From NCBI RefSeq assembly GCF_006345805.1, contig NC_042997.1:134168001-134232000 (forward strand): a stretch of 64,000 bases of DNA, in the 5' to 3' direction. A program made the translations under genes and the position numbers. This DNA comes from Octopus sinensis. Lineage: Eukaryota. Positions 3,783 through 50,341 of this stretch are shown in pieces. Below the pieces are notes generated by a model. It saw only the letters and a list, made by a program, of their open reading frames with translations. It did no database searches and had not been told where the DNA came from. Positions within the stretch are counted from its first letter, which is position 1. Each line of letters begins with the position of its first letter.

Positions 3783-3799
3783 TGACCACTGTGTGGTTA
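3783..3799 (+). promoter_or_regulatory. 3'UTR stem-loop TGACCAC-TGT-GTGGTTA (Py-Pu-Py triloop), copy 1
   Basis: 7-bp stem (one G-U) with UGU loop. Confidence 0.55.
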
Positions 3800-4681
3800 T
3801 TATTACATTTATTATTACATTTATTATTATAATTCTTCTTCTTCTTCTTCTTCTTCTTCTTCTTCTTCTTCTTCTTCTTCTTCTTCTTGTTATTATATGA
3901 ACCGATATGGAACTGACCGAAATTACGCATGCATTCGCGAATTGGAGGGTAACGTTCATGCGGCCAAATGAATGGAACGTATATATGTGTGTACGTCTTC
4001 ATATATGCACATTCTGTCCTTTCTATATATTTTATTTCATTATATTCCAGTATATATACATATACATATATATTAATAATAATAATATGGCAATAAAAAG
4101 AATGAATGAGACCTCAATATTACATAAATAGAGGAATTTACCTATAAATATATTATGTGACAATTAGTTGGTTGTCATAATAAAACTCAGAATTTCGGAT
4201 GCTGTGGCTGAAATCTGCTCATCAGTTATTAAGTCAAATAAGAACGCGGTAAAAAAAAAAAAACGTTGAATAAAGTGAAATTACTCCAATAGGCGTGAGG
4301 AAAGTAAAACTGCGTTCCTAGAATCTGCATATGTATACATGTACACATATACATTCACGTACGCACACACACACATGTTTATATATATATATATATAGAT
4401 ATATATATATATATGTGCGTGTATGTGTGTATTGTATGTATGTATGTATAGACATATATATCTGTGTTTGTATGTATATGCACACGCGTGTATATGTATG
4501 TATATATATATATATATATTATATTTTGTGAAATTTGATTTAGTATTTCTAAATTGAATTTTTCCCTGTAAGTTTGGAATAATATCCCCTCATATTATTA
4601 TATACATATATATATATATATATATATAAATATTAAAATTAAAGTAGAAGGTTAATGAAAATATTTCTTATTTTATTTCAG

Positions 4682-5215
4682 GATCTCCCTCAAGTTGTAA
4701 TCTTTCTCTTCTTGAACTTCATCTTGATTGTATCTTCGGCATCAATTCCAACCCAGTGTAAAGTACCAACAGACTTAAAAGTCCGCTACGACAGCTTGTC
4801 CAAAGCAGACGTTGACAATCGATTTTTTCTGCCAGCTGAAATGGCCCCAGCCGAAAGTAACCGGACAACACTGACCGATGGTGATAAAAAGTGCCCAGCA
4901 TCGCCTGCATCTATTGGTAAAATCCGCGAACGTTCCACTTGTCCTTGGTACCTGAACATTATTAATGATTCAACAGTTTTCCCTCCATCACGCAGTGAAG
5001 CGGTATGTCGCTGTAGAAACTGTTTAGAATCTAACAGCACCAAGCAGCAATGTTCGACTGTATACACTAAAATGACTGTCCTGAAACGTACAGGTGAATG
5101 TGTTGATGGACTGTATGTTTATGAGCCACATGTGATTGATGTAGCCACAGCCTGTGTGTGTGCACGGAAGGTCGATGGCATTGTAGGTAAAAATGGTGAA
5201 GACTATGAGTCCTAA
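4682..5215 (+). CDS. IL17: IL-17-like cytokine, copy 2, coding exon 2 (first exon with ATG presumably upstream of the window; ~178 aa)
   Basis: Hydrophobic signal peptide (DLPQVVIFLFLNFILIVSSA) and IL-17 cystine-knot pattern RSTCPW...D...P...EAVCRC..C...C..V...VLKR..C...Y...ACVC. Polypyrimidine acceptor ttttatttcag ends at 4681. Confidence 0.92.
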   Translation, partial: DLPQVVIFLFLNFILIVSSASIPTQCKVPTDLKVRYDSLSKADVDNRFFLPAEMAPAESNRTTLTDGDKKCPASPASIGKIRERSTCPWYLNIINDSTVFPPSRSEAVCRCRNCLESNSTKQQCSTVYTKMTVLKRTGECVDGLYVYEPHVIDVATACVCARKVDGIVGKNGEDYES

Positions 5216-5287
5216 AAATCGACCAACTGCTAAATTGTTCAATGCGTGTTACGCAAAAGTTATTCATAGTATCATGGAACAACAAGT

Positions 5288-5304
5288 TGACCACTGTGTG
5301 GTTA
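5288..5304 (+). promoter_or_regulatory. 3'UTR stem-loop TGACCAC-TGT-GTGGTTA, copy 2
   Basis: Same stem, UGU loop. Confidence 0.6.
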
Positions 5305-46509: not shown

Positions 46510-48380
46510 AATAAATGTTGGGGTTGTGTTGACCGCACGTGCAGAAATGATAGGCAAGGAAAAATTATAAAAAGGCAGAATGCTAAATTGAAGATAAATT
46601 TTAATGAAAATGGGTGTATGGAAAATTTTGAAAAATTAACAAAATATATATATATTAATTCAAACCGGTTTCGTCACAATCTGACTTTTCAAGAATTGTA
46701 AGGTGAATATAAAAAAAAATTTTATGATTGAGGAAGGGAAAAAAAGAAAATTACATTGTTTTTTGCAAAAAGATAATAAACATATACAAAAATTAAAAAT
46801 AGGTACACCGATACATTGTAAAGTCTTTGTGTATCTCGAGTTCAATGATAGTTCTTGAAAAAATTACCTTGGAGGATTGAGATCCATGTGATTAAATCCA
46901 TGTGCTGTTTAATTAAAATTAGGATGCCTGTTAAATAAATGTCAAAACAGGAAGTAGTTATCCAGTTCCTGTGAGTAAGGGGAGACAACTCTGTGGGTTT
47001 AAGCTTTTCAATTGGGGTTATCAATTTTTTTGTAATAAAGGGTGTTAATAAACCTTAAATTATAAAATTATCATTTTAGATTCATTTGCATTATCTTTTT
47101 TTATATATAATTGTTTGCTAACTTAACATTCAGATTTTTACACTTTATTTGTATTGTTTTCTAATAATATAAATTTACATAAACCAATTTATAATTACAT
47201 TTCAGATTGTTATGTCATATATAATAACAATAATAATAATAATAATAACAACAATAATAATAATGATAAATAAAGAATATAAGTTTTAGCTTGAAGTGAT
47301 GACTTATATATTTGTATTGGTCCATCCATGAAGAATGAGGTAGAAAAAAGAAATATGATCAACGAGGAGTTTGCATATTAAGATGCATTTGAATTTTTCA
47401 ATAAAAAGATTCTTCTTGTTAATTCTCTCATTCCGTCTTTACATTGGTAGAAGGGGAATATGTAAAATTTGGGCTTTTTGTCTTTAGCGTATGAGTCTAT
47501 GTGGCTACTTAGTGGAATTTGCCGGTATTCTGGGAGATTTATTTGTTCTTTATGGACCGCTACTCTTTTACGTAAAGGGAGGCTCGTTTGTCCAACATAA
47601 TTATGTTGGCAATCGTAGATAAGGTTCTCGGAGGAACAGGAGAAGTTGGTCTTGATTTTAAACTTCGTTCCTTGTTTGAAGATAAATTCAGAGCCTTCAA
47701 GTAGGAAGGGACAGGTGCCACAGTTTGGGCGTGCATATTTTTTAACTGCTGGGGGTGGATGTGGTGTGTGAAGTTTGGCATTGGCCACGAGTTTTTTCAA
47801 AGATTTATGTTGCCTTTTACACTTGAGGATTTTGTGTGTATTTATAATGTCTTTCATTTTTGGGTCTGTTGACAGTAGAGTGAGGTTTTGTATGATTGTG
47901 GCGTATGCTTCGATATTTTTGGGGTTCTGGGTGGAAATGCATGGAAGTATTTTGGGGTTGTGTGTGTTGTTGCGTTGGGTGGTTTTCAGTGTAATGTTCT
48001 CTAGTTCTTTGGCACGTTTTATTCCATACTCTATAAGGGTGGGGGGATATTGGCGTTGTAATAGTATTTTTTCGAGGTCTTGAAGGCGCATTTCTCGAGT
48101 TTTGGGATCCGAGACAATGGTGCATACCCTTTTAGATAAGTTGAAAGGGATATTTGTCTTGGTGTGTTTTGGGTGGCATGAACTAAAGAGGCGGTATTGT
48201 TGTGAGTCTGTAGGTTTGTGGTAGATGTCTGGTCTGTTATGATTTGGTTCTTAGTTGTTTTTATAATTAGGAGATCCTATTTCTTAATTTTAGTATATGT
48301 TTATTATTATTTTTTTGCAAAAAACAATGTAATTTTCTTTCCCCCCCATCAATCATAACAATTTTTTAAATTTTCACCTA
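46510..48380 (-). mobile_element. Penelope-like element (RT C-terminus and GIY-YIG) inside intron 1 of copy 4, with inverted 5' fragment
   Basis: ORF 47378-48091: CGTCP...NFSCSSENLIY...YVGQTSLPLRKRVAVH; 48285-48380 is inversely similar to 46700-46800. Confidence 0.75.
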
Positions 48381-49723
48381 TATATATATATATATATATA
48401 TATATATATATATATATATATATTATATATATATATATATATATATTTATATATTTATATATATATTTATATATATATATATATATATATATATATATAT
48501 ATATATATATATATATATATATATAATATATTTATATATTTATATATATATTTATATATATATATATATATATATATATATATATATATATATATATATA
48601 TATATATATATATTATCAAAAGAAAGAACAGGATGCAAAGGATTTTGCGGTACATATGTTTCTGACTTTATTGAGCAATTCATATAAATGCATAATTGAT
48701 ATAACATGTAGGCCAACTGCCTTCTTCAGCCGCGTACAATTACCACACCAAAGACATGTATTACATTATAGCAGGTTTGAGAAGAAGTTTGGGAAAAAAC
48801 GAGTTTCATTGGGAAGGTAAATCCTCATAGTCGTATGTGGCATAGCGAGACACCAAAACAAAACGTCCATACCGTTTTTTCAGTCGATAAGGAATGAGGT
48901 GGGTTGGATCTTGAGAGAAAGAGGGAGGAGGGGGAGGGCGGTGACACTTTAATGAAGTTGGGATCACAAAGAGCAAAAAGTATATGTATAAATCTAAAGA
49001 TGATTATACATGATAATAGTAAGTACAAAATGTAATAAAAAGAGTAAAGATGTAAAAAAATAAGTATATACTGATACAAAGTATGTCATGAGTAAGGTCA
49101 TAAATTCTAGAGATGTATTGTGACAGTGTAGAAGGTATCAGACCTAAAGGGTAAAGAGTAAGATTAAAAGTAAAAAATAGCAAGGAAATACAAATAAGGA
49201 TAAAGAAGCGAAAGAATAAAGGCGAATAATAAAGGGAGGTAGTGATTGTTGATTGATAATAACACCGTTCCAGACGGTTTTACATGCTTTAGTAGATAAG
49301 TCTATAGACACACGCCATACTTAGAGCATACAACTGAAATTAACCATTCACCCATTACCTCCCCAGATAATTAAGATTTAATTTATGACACTCACTAAAA
49401 CATCAACCCTAACCTATCATCTCTAATCGCCATGTATTTTTCTGTATCTCTTTTTCTCTATCTCTTTATTCTTATCTTACTTTTCCTTATGTCCACTTTT
49501 TATTTATTTTTTATCTTTTTATCCCTGTCTGTCTGTCTCTATCTATCTATCTGTCTATCTATCTGTCTATCTATCTATCTATCTATCTATCTATCTATCT
49601 ATCTATCTATCTATCTATCTATCTATCTATCTATCTATCTATCTATCTATATATATATATATATGTGTGTGTGTGTAAATTAACGTAGAAAGCTTAATGA
49701 AAATATTTCTTGTTTTATTGCAG

Positions 49724-50233
49724 GATCCACCTCTAGTAATCTTTCTCTTCTTAAACTTCATCTTGATTGTATCTTCGGCATCAATTCCAACCCAATGTAA
49801 AATACCAACAGACTTAAAAGTCCGCTACGACAACTTGTCCAATGCAACCAGTGGTGATAATTTTTTTCTGCCCGCTGAAATGGCTCCAGCCAAAAGTAAC
49901 CAGACAACACTGACCGATGGTGATAAAAGCTGCCCAACATCACCTGCATCTAGTGACATCCGCGAACGTTCCACCTGTCCTTGGTACCTGAAAAATATTA
50001 ATGATACAACATTTTTCCCATCATTACGTAGAGAAGCGGTATGTCGCTGTACAAACTGTTCCGACCCTACGAACAAAAATCAACAATGTGCGACTGTATA
50101 CACTAATATGACTGTGCTGAAACGTACAGGTGAATGTGTTGATGGACTGTATGTTTATGAACCACATGTGATTGATGTAGCCACAGCCTGTGTGTGTGCA
50201 CGGACGGTTGATGTCACTGTTGATGGAAAATGA
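49724..50233 (+). CDS. IL17: IL-17-like cytokine, copy 4; CDS = join(46233..46235,49724..50233), 170 aa
   Basis: IL-17 cysteine pattern, signal peptide, acceptor ttgcag ending at 49723, upstream ATG|gtaagt at 46233-46241. Confidence 0.92.
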   Translation, partial: DPPLVIFLFLNFILIVSSASIPTQCKIPTDLKVRYDNLSNATSGDNFFLPAEMAPAKSNQTTLTDGDKSCPTSPASSDIRERSTCPWYLKNINDTTFFPSLRREAVCRCTNCSDPTNKNQQCATVYTNMTVLKRTGECVDGLYVYEPHVIDVATACVCARTVDVTVDGK

Positions 50234-50324
50234 GACGACTAACAGACGTAAAAACCAACCAACTGCTAAATTGTTCAGTGCGTGTAACGCAGAAGTTGTT
50301 TACAGTATAATTAAAACGTCATGT

Positions 50325-50341
50325 TGACCACTATGTGGTTA
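50325..50341 (+). promoter_or_regulatory. 3'UTR stem-loop TGACCAC-TAT-GTGGTTA, copy 4
   Basis: Same stem, UAU loop. Confidence 0.6.

What the first reader, a model, noticed from the sequence alone, without database searches (positions are those of the whole stretch)
3783..50341. Invariant 3'UTR stem-loop with a varying Py-Pu-Py triloop in every IL-17 paralog (Roquin/Regnase-1-type decay element)
Seen: 60-110 nt after the stop, each copy has TGACCAC-nnn-GTGGTTA (3783-3799, 5288-5304, 21600-21616, 50325-50341). The 7-bp stem is identical in all copies although the neighbouring UTR diverges. The loop reads UGU, UGU, CGU and UAU, always pyrimidine-purine-pyrimidine. Known: Roquin (constitutive decay elements) and Regnase-1 bind 3'UTR hairpins with Py-Pu-Py triloops in mammalian cytokine mRNAs. 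Inference: these mollusc IL-17 mRNAs may be under the same hairpin-directed decay control, pointing to an ancient or convergent cytokine-dampening circuit. Only three independent paralogs support this.
Basis: partly seen in the sequence, partly recalled or inferred. Interest (0 to 1): 0.78.

Follow-up and report, generated by a model that had tools for sequence, protein, structure and literature searches.

The report
Conserved 3'UTR hairpin, octopus IL-17 genes
Just after the stop codon, every octopus IL-17 cytokine gene sampled carries a small RNA hairpin that selection has kept base-paired across paralogs, species and genera; it has the shape of the mammalian Roquin-type mRNA decay elements, but nothing yet shows which protein reads it or that it causes decay.

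Summary
TGACCAC-NNN-GTGGTTA occurs exactly four times in the window, always on the + strand, 63-91 nt after the stop of an IL-17 (PF06083) last exon. The window is Octopus sinensis.

I added 13 more independent IL-17 3' flanks from O. sinensis, O. bimaculoides, Argonauta hians and one unnamed octopod, giving 17 in all.
- Every one of the 17 has the homologous element.
- The 6-bp core stem is the slowest-evolving block of the proximal UTR: 1.17 parsimony changes per column, against 2.45 at four-fold sites and 1.68 at codon positions 1 and 2.
- 11 of 14 stem substitutions keep pairing, including one A-U to G-C swap.
- RNAalifold predicts only this helix.
- G.U pairs make it specific to the sense strand.

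The loop is N-R-U rather than strictly Y-R-Y: YRY in 13/17, purine at position 2 in 17/17, U at position 3 in 16/17, C-G closing pair in 17/17.

It is part of a roughly 100-nt module.

SL2 fits the relaxed Roquin CDE consensus. That shape is common by chance, however. Inclusion in the mRNA, the presence of the reader protein and any decay effect are all untested.

Verdict: a real, selected RNA structure and a plausible decay element. Roquin/Regnase remains a hypothesis.

The parts
3178..3710 (+). IL-17 copy 1, last (main coding) exon; 1-bp deletion near 3545 breaks the frame, so this is a pseudogene or an assembly error
   Evidence: tblastn split into two frames
4682..5215 (+). IL-17 copy 2, last exon, intact (177 aa plus stop)
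   Evidence: PF06083, E 2.3e-13
21003..21536 (+). IL-17 copy 3, last exon, intact; its exon 1 ends with ATG at 19346-19348
49724..50233 (+). IL-17 copy 4, last exon, intact; its exon 1 ends with ATG at 46233-46235
3783..3799 (+). SL2 copy 1: UGACCAC-UGU-GUGGUUA (7 bp including one G.U; the conserved core is the 6 bp nearest the loop)
5288..5304 (+). SL2 copy 2: UGACCAC-UGU-GUGGUUA; isolated dG -7.0 kcal/mol
21600..21616 (+). SL2 copy 3: UGACCAC-CGU-GUGGUUA
50325..50341 (+). SL2 copy 4: UGACCAC-UAU-GUGGUUA
3738..3750 (+). SL1 copy 1: UGCGU-GUU-ACGCA (5 bp, triloop)
5243..5255 (+). SL1 copy 2: UGCGU-GUU-ACGCA; isolated dG -4.5 kcal/mol
21557..21569 (+). SL1 copy 3: UGCGU-GUA-ACGCA
50279..50291 (+). 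SL1 copy 4: UGCGU-GUA-ACGCA
3704..3816 (+). Whole conserved proximal 3'UTR module, copy 1 (stop, SL1, spacer, SL2, UUAUUAU tail)
   Evidence: covariance model, 111.9 bits
5209..5321 (+). Whole conserved proximal 3'UTR module, copy 2
   Evidence: 111.9 bits
21523..21633 (+). Whole conserved proximal 3'UTR module, copy 3
   Evidence: 95.2 bits
50245..50358 (+). Whole conserved proximal 3'UTR module, copy 4
   Evidence: 103.8 bits

Best explanation
SL2 is a sense-strand RNA hairpin with a 6-bp conserved core, a triloop of the form N-purine-U and an invariant C-G closing pair. Purifying selection maintains it in the proximal 3'UTR of octopod IL-17 genes. It is the most constrained part of a roughly 100-nt module: stop codon, then SL1 (5 bp, GUA loop), then a spacer of about 30 nt, then SL2, then UUAUUAU.

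The most likely mechanism is that the hairpin is a shape-specific docking site for a stem-loop-binding protein that limits IL-17 mRNA lifetime or translation. The best candidate readers are the single invertebrate Roquin (ROQ domain), possibly working with the Regnase/ZC3H12 nuclease, because SL2 has the geometry and loop preferences of a Roquin constitutive decay element.

Shown here: the element exists, is specific to IL-17 3' flanks, is conserved above neutral and coding rates, keeps its pairing, and is strand-specific.
Inferred: it lies in the mature mRNA, it is bound by a protein, that protein is Roquin or Regnase, and the outcome is decay.

My split of confidence: selected RNA structure about 0.8; post-transcriptional control element in the mRNA about 0.65; read by Roquin or Regnase about 0.3. 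The single confidence value given (0.5) is for the statement as a whole, with the Roquin/Regnase reader taken as the leading candidate and not as a settled part.
For: Sampling: all 17 independent paralogs (O. sinensis, O. bimaculoides, Argonauta hians, one unnamed octopod) carry the homologous site 44-97 nt after the stop.

Pairing:
- 89% of cells are paired over both helices, and 96% (98 of 102) in the SL2 6-bp core, against 27-50% when the partners are slid. No shuffle out of 500 reaches the observed pairing or covariation score.
- RNAalifold predicts only the SL2 core on its own.
- Pair types seen: G.U/A-U/G-C at pair 2, C-G/U.G at pair 4, A-U to G-C at pair 6.

Rates on a CDS tree, in changes per column:
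- SL2 core 1.17
- four-fold sites 2.45 (p=0.004)
- other UTR columns 2.87 (p=0.001)
- codon positions 1 and 2: 1.68
- 11 of 14 stem changes keep pairing (binomial p about 0.001-0.01)

Pairwise identity: SL2 core 84%, four-fold sites 60%.

Folding: the triloop hairpin is the local MFE in 14 of 17 sequences and appears in the MFE or centroid of all three window UTRs.

Specificity: the covariance model and the motif hit only IL-17 3' flanks in 321 kb.

Strand: 14 G.U cells pair only on the sense strand, giving 96% paired on the sense strand against 84% on the antisense (derived).

Loop and closing pair match published Roquin preferences, namely a YRN loop, U at position 3, a Y-R closing pair when position 2 is G, and the UGU plus C-G combination used in all solved ROQ-CDE structures (PMC6294493).

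Reader in invertebrates: invertebrates generally have one rc3h1 and one zc3h12 gene (PMC11172303). A two-stem-loop Roquin plus Regnase element works in C. elegans ets-4 (PMC9371910).
Against: - No transcript evidence places the hairpin in the mRNA. Copy 4 has ATTAAA 15 nt upstream of it, and canonical poly(A) signals downstream are found in only 7 of 17 sequences.
- Only one fully compensatory pair change occurs in SL2. Most support comes from one-sided, wobble-compatible changes.
- Three of 17 copies have a weakened stem (L004, L006, L008).
- Loop position 1 is not held to a pyrimidine (A in 3 of 17), and one loop is CAA.
- The window copies have a G.U wobble and only 5 contiguous Watson-Crick pairs, whereas the published CDE search required 6-8 bp without G.U.
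- The original strict CDE consensus (3' purine stack) is not met.
- The CDE shape is frequent by chance.
- SL1 (GUA loop, 5 bp) does not fit any Roquin consensus.
- The presence of Roquin or Regnase in octopus was not tested here.
Confidence: 0.5

Rival explanations
1. SL2, with SL1, is a selected RNA structure, but it is read by a different protein or serves another purpose. Candidates are translational control, mRNA localisation or secretion-coupled targeting, stabilisation on immune stimulation, or help with 3'-end formation. The resemblance to a Roquin CDE would then be coincidental.
For: - The same conservation and pairing evidence applies.
- SL1, with its near-invariant GUA loop (0, 0 and 1 changes), fits no Roquin or Regnase consensus.
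- Loop position 1 is unconstrained.
- The UUAU tail directly after the stem is as conserved as the stem (0.93), which suggests a composite site.
- CDE-shaped hairpins are common by chance.
Against: No other known stem-loop reader with a preference for a triloop with purine at 2, U at 3 and a C-G closing pair comes to mind; this is my own knowledge, not a test. Cytokine mRNAs are classic decay targets.
Confidence: 0.3
2. The constrained unit is a linear sequence motif, for example GUGGUUAUUAU or GACCAC acting as a microRNA seed match or a single-strand RBP site. The complementarity of the two arms would be incidental.
For: - The 3' arm plus tail (GUGGUUAUUAU) is the longest nearly invariant run.
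- A mussel IL-17 is reported to be regulated by a miRNA through its 3'UTR (PMC10055819).
Against: - Both arms are constrained.
- Changes in one arm are of the type the other arm tolerates: G.U to A-U or G-C, and C-G to U.G.
- One A-U to G-C double change occurs.
- 11 of 14 stem changes keep pairing.
- A seed match would not explain the conserved triloop geometry.
Confidence: 0.1
3. The element is a DNA-level regulatory site just downstream of the gene. It would be an imperfect palindrome bound by a transcription factor; the right arm with loop base 3 reads TGTGGTT, the RUNX consensus as I recall it.
For: TGTGGTT or TGCGGTT is present in 13 of 17 copies. The RUNX consensus is recalled from memory, not tested.
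Against: - The left arm is equally conserved but is not a RUNX site.
- Four copies break the heptamer (L004, L006, L008, L009).
- G.T 'pairs' are asymmetric for a DNA palindrome, yet they are what an RNA helix tolerates; sense-strand pairing is 96% against 84% antisense.
- The neighbouring SL1 also covaries as RNA.
Confidence: 0.06
4. There is no function. The identity is left over from recent tandem duplication or gene conversion among clustered paralogs.
For: - Window copies are young (93% and about 85% CDS identity), and copies 1 and 2 are 99% identical.
- The rest of the proximal UTR evolves at about the third-codon-position rate (2.87 against 3.0).
Against: - The stem is conserved across subfamilies that pre-date the O. 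sinensis / O. bimaculoides split.
- One Argonauta paralog with only 54% protein identity has a perfect 7-bp stem (L010).
- The stem evolves more slowly than codon positions 1 and 2.
- Alignability stops abruptly 3' of the tail.
Confidence: 0.05

Closest known systems
Roquin constitutive decay element (CDE), e.g. in TNF, ICOS, UCP3, CSF3 and ZC3H12A 3'UTRs (Leppek 2013; relaxed consensus in Braun 2018, PMC6294493)
   Same: Both are a single 3'UTR hairpin with a trinucleotide loop and a 6-8 bp stem. Both have a purine at loop position 2 and a strong preference for U at position 3. Both are conserved through structure-preserving changes, and both sit in a cytokine mRNA. In window copies 1 and 2 the apical C-UGU-G is the loop and closing-pair combination used in all solved ROQ-CDE structures.
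   Different: Loop position 1 is not always a pyrimidine (A in 3 of 17). The upper stem is C-G, A-U, C-G, so it lacks the 3' purine stack of the original consensus. Most copies carry a G.U or U.G wobble, which lowered activity in UCP3 and was excluded from the published search. No binding or decay data exist. The organism is a mollusc, and an obligatory-looking second hairpin lies upstream.
Regnase-1 (ZC3H12A) target stem-loops, e.g. in the IL-6 3'UTR (Mino 2015, as cited in PMC9371910 and PMC13732794)
   Same: Both are stem-loops in the 3'UTR of an inflammatory cytokine mRNA with a Py-Pu-Py type loop. Regnase-1 is tightly linked to the IL-17 axis in mammals.
   Different: In mammals Regnase-1 restrains IL-17 receptor signalling outputs such as Nfkbiz, rather than being known here to cleave IL-17 mRNAs themselves. 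Direct RNA specificity of Regnase is unclear. Nothing was tested here.
C. elegans ets-4 3'UTR silencing fragment: ADE stem-loop (bound by the RLE-1/Roquin ROQ domain) plus RCE stem-loop (REGE-1 cleavage site) (PMC9371910)
   Same: It is an invertebrate example of two neighbouring stem-loops within about 100 nt of 3'UTR, both needed for silencing. It shows that Roquin-type stem-loop reading is ancient.
   Different: The ets-4 Roquin site is a hexaloop ADE, not a triloop. The target is a transcription factor, not a cytokine. The octopus SL1 and SL2 have no functional data.
AU-rich elements (AUUUA) in cytokine 3'UTRs
   Same: The sequence after SL2 is AU-rich (UUAUUAU), and AUUUA pentamers follow within about 40 nt in several paralogs. 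In TNF a CDE and an ARE coexist.
   Different: The AUUUA pentamers are not positionally conserved (0-3 per copy, and none in window copies 3 and 4). The constrained unit is the helix, not the AU-rich tract.

Membership tests
Roquin CDE (relaxed consensus, Braun 2018) | Hairpin capped by a trinucleotide loop | tested here: met
   The triloop hairpin is the local MFE in 14 of 17 paralogs and in all window copies. RNAalifold predicts it.
Roquin CDE (relaxed consensus, Braun 2018) | Stem of 6-8 bp | tested here: met
   Window copies have 7 bp. A 6-bp core is conserved (96% of cells paired), and the seventh, bottom pair is broken in 8 of 17.
Roquin CDE (relaxed consensus, Braun 2018) | Stem without G.U wobble (used in the published search because G.U reduced activity) | tested here: not met
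   Window copies have G2.U16. Only 4 of 17 paralogs (L005a, L007, L010, L011) have an all-Watson-Crick 6-bp core. The same paper did tolerate G.U when scoring conservation.
Roquin CDE (relaxed consensus, Braun 2018) | Loop Y-R-N, with U preferred at position 3 and a Y-R closing pair when position 2 is G | tested here: met
   Window loops are UGU, UGU, CGU and UAU. Across 17 paralogs: YRN 14, purine at position 2 17, U at position 3 16, C-G closing pair 17. Exceptions at position 1 are AAU twice and AGU once.
Roquin CDE (original consensus, Leppek 2013, as summarised in PMC6294493) | Three Y-R pairs in the upper stem giving a 3' purine stack | tested here: not met
   The upper stem is C-G, A-U, C-G, so the 3' side reads G-U-G. 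Braun 2018 reports that this feature is not required.
Roquin CDE | Conserved in evolution through identical sequence or structure-preserving changes | tested here: met
   11 of 14 stem substitutions keep pairing, and the stem evolves more slowly than four-fold sites and codon positions 1 and 2.
Roquin CDE | Lies within the 3'UTR of the mature mRNA | not testable with these tools
   No transcript or 3'-end data could be reached. No canonical poly(A) hexamer lies between stop and hairpin in 15 of 17, but copy 4 has ATTAAA 15 nt upstream.
Roquin CDE | Bound by the ROQ domain and confers Roquin-dependent decay | not testable with these tools
   This needs EMSA or NMR and reporter or knock-down assays.
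Roquin CDE | A Roquin (ROQ-domain) protein exists in the organism | not tested
   The literature says invertebrates carry one rc3h1 and generally one zc3h12 gene (PMC11172303). Octopus was not checked here.
Regnase-1 target stem-loop | 3'UTR stem-loop with a Py-Pu-Py loop whose disruption abolishes Regnase-dependent, translation- and UPF1-coupled cleavage | not testable with these tools
   Only the loop-sequence part can be read: YRY in 13 of 17.
Interleukin-17 family (the host genes) | IL-17 cystine-knot domain, Pfam PF06083, above the gathering score | tested here: met
   50.7-51.2 bits against a cut-off of 24, E about 2e-13, for copies 2, 3 and 4. The nearest database proteins are named interleukin 17-like in Octopus species.
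Any Rfam family | Match at or above the gathering score | tested here: not met
   No matches in the whole window. Only chance-level hits (E 4.6-9) around the module.

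The most novel reading that the evidence does not exclude
The expanded octopod IL-17 family is under direct hairpin-mediated mRNA silencing by the ancestral Roquin/Regnase pair. SL2 would act as a CDE-type Roquin site and SL1 as a partner element, analogous to ADE plus RCE in C. elegans ets-4. This would place the cytokine itself, and not only its signalling outputs, inside an ancient (or convergently rebuilt) IL-17 / MALT1 / Roquin-Regnase feedback circuit outside vertebrates.
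Probability: 0.25. Interest if true: 0.8.

Novelty: new member of a known kind. Interest (0 to 1): 0.55.

Why it matters
Stem-loop decay elements read by Roquin and Regnase are a central brake on vertebrate inflammation. Outside vertebrates only one target, C. elegans ets-4, is well worked out.

A conserved, CDE-shaped hairpin on every sampled member of the large octopod IL-17 expansion would be the first candidate for hairpin-directed control of an invertebrate cytokine. It would let one test directly whether the link between the IL-17 axis and Roquin/Regnase is ancestral.

The module is a compact, testable cis-element of about 100 nt shared by dozens of immune genes. It is also a handy marker for annotating IL-17 3' ends in cephalopod genomes.

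I found no paper in the searchable library that describes it.

Tried and rejected
- Rfam: no family at gathering score in the window, and only chance hits around the module.
- IL-17 relatives in JGI metagenome contigs, looked for in order to reach squid, cuttlefish or bivalve loci: 90 pattern hits, none confirmed. Phylogenetic breadth therefore stays within octopods.
- Transcript evidence:
  - The two Logan contigs (L001, L008) are genomic, since intron sequence precedes the exon; they are not cDNA.
  - Cluster members are all genome-derived models.
  - The NCBI gene ranges returned are CDS only.
- Literature linking Roquin or Regnase to molluscs or cephalopod IL-17 UTRs: nothing relevant.
- Braun 2018 supplementary tables, partly truncated as held: no IL17 entry among the predicted human CDEs. 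This is inconclusive.
- Whole-UTR thermodynamic stability: not different from shuffles (z +0.2 to +0.5). Only the local hairpins stand out (z about -2.2).
  - histone 3' stem-loop (4-nt loop, different sequence)
  - Smaug recognition element (CNGG loop)
  - Pumilio UGUANAUA
  - miRNA precursor or ADAR substrate (stem too short)
- Roquin in octopus: I verified a human Roquin-1 query against PDB 4TXA. I ran no further search on finding the octopus orthologue, because vertebrate hits would probably have crowded it out of the list.

Full report
OBSERVATION. The pattern TGACCAC-NNN-GTGGTTA occurs exactly four times in the 64-kb window, all on the + strand, at 3783, 5288, 21600 and 50325. The loops are TGT, TGT, CGT and TAT. 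None is expected in dinucleotide shuffles, and relaxing to two mismatches adds nothing new. Each copy lies 72, 72, 63 and 91 nt after the stop codon of an open reading frame that ends an IL-17 gene. The frames carry the Pfam IL17 domain at about 51 bits against a cut-off of 24. tblastn finds only these four IL-17 exons in the window. The observation as written is therefore correct.

Copies 1 and 2 are a 99.25%-identical tandem duplicate with a period of 1505 bp. Copy 1 has a 1-bp deletion near 3545 that shifts the frame.

CONTEXT. The nearest database proteins are 'interleukin 17-like' proteins of Octopus sinensis, O. vulgaris and O. bimaculoides. Two of the hits are the window's own products, on the 213-Mb O. 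sinensis chromosome CM016859.1. The genes have a tiny first coding exon ending in ATG: 19346-19348 for copy 3, 46233-46235 for copy 4, and 62749-62751 for a fifth gene whose main exon lies beyond the window. The duplicated unit is about 1 kb. It comprises about 45 nt of intron end, the exon, and about 400 nt of 3' flank, at 80-84% identity between the independent copies. At that low divergence an invariant 14-nt stem is not decisive, so the real test had to come from more distant paralogs.

WIDER SAMPLE. I used all twelve look-ups of encoding contigs and obtained 14 further IL-17 last exons with their 3' flanks:
- O. sinensis: L002, L007, L009, L011
- O. bimaculoides: L003, L004, L005 (two), L012 (two)
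- Argonauta hians: L006, L010
- an unnamed octopod from Logan run SRR11869391: L001, L008

These are documented. Leaving out the near-identical copy 1 gives 17 independent sequences, at 34-89% pairwise protein identity. Every one has a recognisable homologue of the hairpin 44-97 nt after its stop.

IS IT A STRUCTURE UNDER SELECTION? On the 17-sequence alignment A2 the evidence is as follows.
- Pairing. 89% of cells pair over the two named helices, and 98 of 102 cells pair in the 6-bp core of SL2. When the 3' partners are slid, 27-50% pair. No shuffle out of 500 reaches the observed pairing or covariation score.
- Independent prediction. RNAalifold, given no hint, predicts exactly one helix, the SL2 6-bp core.
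- Pair types. Pair 2 is G.U in 9 sequences, A-U in 5 and G-C in 3. Pair 4 is C-G in 11, U.G in 4 and broken in 2. Pair 6 is A-U in 16 and G-C in one, which is a true double change (L005b). The closing pair C-G is invariant.
- Rates. On a maximum-likelihood tree of the coding sequences, the SL2 core columns take 1.17 parsimony changes per column. The comparison values are 2.45 at four-fold sites (Mann-Whitney p=0.004), 2.87 in the rest of the UTR module (p=0.001), 1.68 at codon positions 1 and 2, and 3.0 at position 3.
- Direction of change. Of the 14 stem substitutions, 11 keep pairing. If 35-45% of random substitutions would do so, that gives p of about 0.001-0.01.
- Identity. Mean pairwise identity is 84% in the stem, against 60% at four-fold sites and 72% over the coding sequence.
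- Strand. The 14 G.U cells pair only in the sense transcript: 96% of cells pair on the sense strand against 84% on the antisense (derived).
- Folding. The isolated hairpin folds at -7.0 kcal/mol (z -2.2) and appears in the MFE or centroid of all three window UTRs. Across the sample the triloop hairpin is the local MFE in 14 of 17. The stem is weakened in L004, L006 and L008.

I conclude that SL2 is a real RNA structure maintained by selection. The covariation is modest, with one double change, and the argument rests mainly on rate and on the direction of the changes.

THE LOOP. The loops are UGU (7), CGU (3), UAU (2), CAU (2), AAU (2), AGU (1) and CAA (1).
- Position 2 is a purine in 17 of 17 (4 changes on the tree, all G/A).
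- Position 3 is U in 16 of 17 (1 change).
- Position 1 changes 8 times and is A in three sequences.

The rule is therefore N-R-U with a pyrimidine bias, not strict Py-Pu-Py. YRY holds in 13 of 17 and YRN in 14 of 17.

About 35 nt upstream lies a second conserved hairpin, SL1: UGCGU-GUA/GUU-ACGCA, at 3738, 5243, 21557 and 50279.
- It shows two kinds of double change: C-G to U-A in the L005a/L007/L011 clade, and G-C to A-U in Argonauta and L009.
- Its loop is almost invariant, with 0, 0 and 1 changes.
- The four bases after SL2 (UUAU) are as conserved as the stem (0.93).
- Directly after them the sequences become unalignable, at 6-8 changes per column.
- A covariance model of the whole module finds the 18 IL-17 3' flanks and nothing else in 321 kb, both strands. 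The next hit has E=0.29.
- The bare motif ACCACNNNGTGGT is likewise found only at IL-17 3' flanks in the loci.
- SL2 outlasts SL1: L004 and L005b have lost SL1 but keep SL2.

IS IT IN THE mRNA? This could not be tested. No transcript or 3'-end data were reachable. In 15 of 17 flanks there is no AATAAA or ATTAAA between the stop and the hairpin. Copy 4 has ATTAAA at 50310-50315, 15 nt before the hairpin, and L001 has one at +22. Downstream canonical signals are not positionally conserved. The sense-strand-specific pairing is indirect evidence that the element acts as RNA.

COMPARISON WITH KNOWN SYSTEMS. Braun et al. 2018 (PMC6294493) define active Roquin CDEs as a 6-8 bp stem with a YRN triloop. 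They add the following:
- There is a pronounced preference for U at loop position 3.
- Y-R closing pairs are enriched when position 2 is G.
- The 3' purine stack is not required.
- Activity is reduced by G.U pairs, which they excluded from their search.
- All solved ROQ-CDE structures use UGU with a C-G closing pair.

SL2 matches on the triloop, the stem length, the purine at position 2, U at position 3, the C-G closing pair and its conservation pattern. It does not match on the G.U wobble (present in the window copies; only 4 of 17 paralogs have an all-Watson-Crick core), on the original purine-stack rule, or at loop position 1 in 3 of 17. SL1 fits no Roquin consensus.

The shape alone is cheap. 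61 hairpins on the + strand of this window fit '7 bp with at most one G.U, plus YRN', mostly inside TA repeats, and about 7 per strand arise in shuffles. Invertebrates are reported to have one rc3h1 and generally one zc3h12 gene (PMC11172303). [quoted passage not shown] A Roquin/Regnase reader in a mollusc is therefore plausible, and a two-hairpin layout has a precedent. I did not test whether octopus has these proteins.

In short, SL2 works like a CDE by shape. Membership is unproven, and one published search criterion is not met in the window copies.

RIVALS.
- A structured element with another reader or function is the main alternative (about 0.3). The invariant SL1 loop and the conserved single-stranded tail hint at a composite site.
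- A linear motif or miRNA site (about 0.1) does not explain the constraint on both arms or the direction of the changes.
- A DNA site (about 0.06), such as the RUNX-like TGTGGTT recalled from memory, does not explain the left arm, the wobble asymmetry or the four copies that break the heptamer.
- Neutral leftover or gene conversion (about 0.05) is contradicted by conservation across subfamilies older than the O. sinensis / O. bimaculoides split. It is also contradicted by an Argonauta paralog with 54% protein identity that has a perfect 7-bp stem.

NOVELTY AND VERDICT. I found no description of this element, or of any Roquin/Regnase link to mollusc IL-17, in the searchable literature. The IL-17 expansion in octopus is known (PMC8353272).

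The finding is a real, selected two-hairpin module in the 3' flank of octopod IL-17 genes. The Roquin/Regnase reading is reasonable but unproven. I file it as a candidate new member of a known kind, namely conserved stem-loop control elements in cytokine 3'UTRs. Interest is moderate, and would be high if the Roquin link is shown.

Noticed in passing
window 3738-3750, 5243-5255, 21557-21569, 50279-50291: A second conserved hairpin, SL1 (UGCGU-GUA/GUU-ACGCA), lies about 35 nt upstream of the reported one. Its loop is nearly invariant, and other octopod paralogs show compensatory stem variants UGUGU/ACACA and UGCAU/AUGCA.
   Followed up: yes
window 3000-4196 versus 4501-5700: Copies 1 and 2 form a 99.25%-identical tandem duplicate with a period of 1505 bp. 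Copy 1 has a 1-bp deletion near 3545 that breaks the IL-17 frame. It is either a very young pseudogene or an assembly artefact.
   Followed up: partly
window 3907-3948 (GT donor at 3949-3950): The RefSeq model XP_029648853.1 for copy 2 takes its first 14 residues (MELTEITHAFANWR) from a short ORF in the 3' flank of copy 1, inside a block conserved downstream of all four copies. Only copies 1 and 2 have the GT donor there. If RNA supports this model, transcription runs well past the hairpin of copy 1.
   Followed up: partly
window ~3893-4060, ~5398-5565, ~21746-21890, ~50467-50620: A second conserved block (ATGAACCGATATGGAnCTnACCGAAATTACGCATGnATTCGCGAATTGGAG...) lies 180-330 nt after the stop in all window copies, and partly in L002 and L003. 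It ends at a shared TTATATTCCAGTA. It appears only in this young subfamily, and its level of identity looks neutral.
   Followed up: partly
window 50310-50315: Copy 4 has ATTAAA 15 nt upstream of its hairpin. If this is used as a poly(A) signal, the mRNA would end in or just after the hairpin.
   Followed up: no
window 62586-62751: This is exon 1 (5'UTR plus ATG at 62749-62751, then GTAAGT) of a fifth IL-17 gene. Its main exon lies beyond the end of the window.
   Followed up: partly
window 24626-28846 (+), 52523-56202 (-), 10741-11721 (+), 37513-38511 (+): These are degraded non-LTR (LINE-like) retrotransposon remnants with endonuclease, reverse-transcriptase and zf-RVT matches. They explain the GC-rich and skewed stretches of the composition profile.
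   Followed up: partly
window 20850-20940, 49538-49662; 3838-3889, 5343-5391: Microsatellites flank the units. (TATC)n/(TCTA)n lies directly upstream of the last exon of copies 3 and 4. (TTC)n lies about 40 nt after the hairpin in copies 1 and 2, replacing the sequence found there in copies 3 and 4.
   Followed up: no
window 17082-17451: A two-copy tandem repeat of a 184-bp unit at 93% identity; its nature is unknown.
   Followed up: no
L011 14416-14620; L006 11440-11480: In L011 a downstream (CA)n tract is predicted to compete with SL2 by pairing with its GU-rich arm. In Argonauta L006 the SL2 stem has decayed, but an alternative hairpin GUGUAU-N8-AUACAC overlaps it.
   Followed up: no
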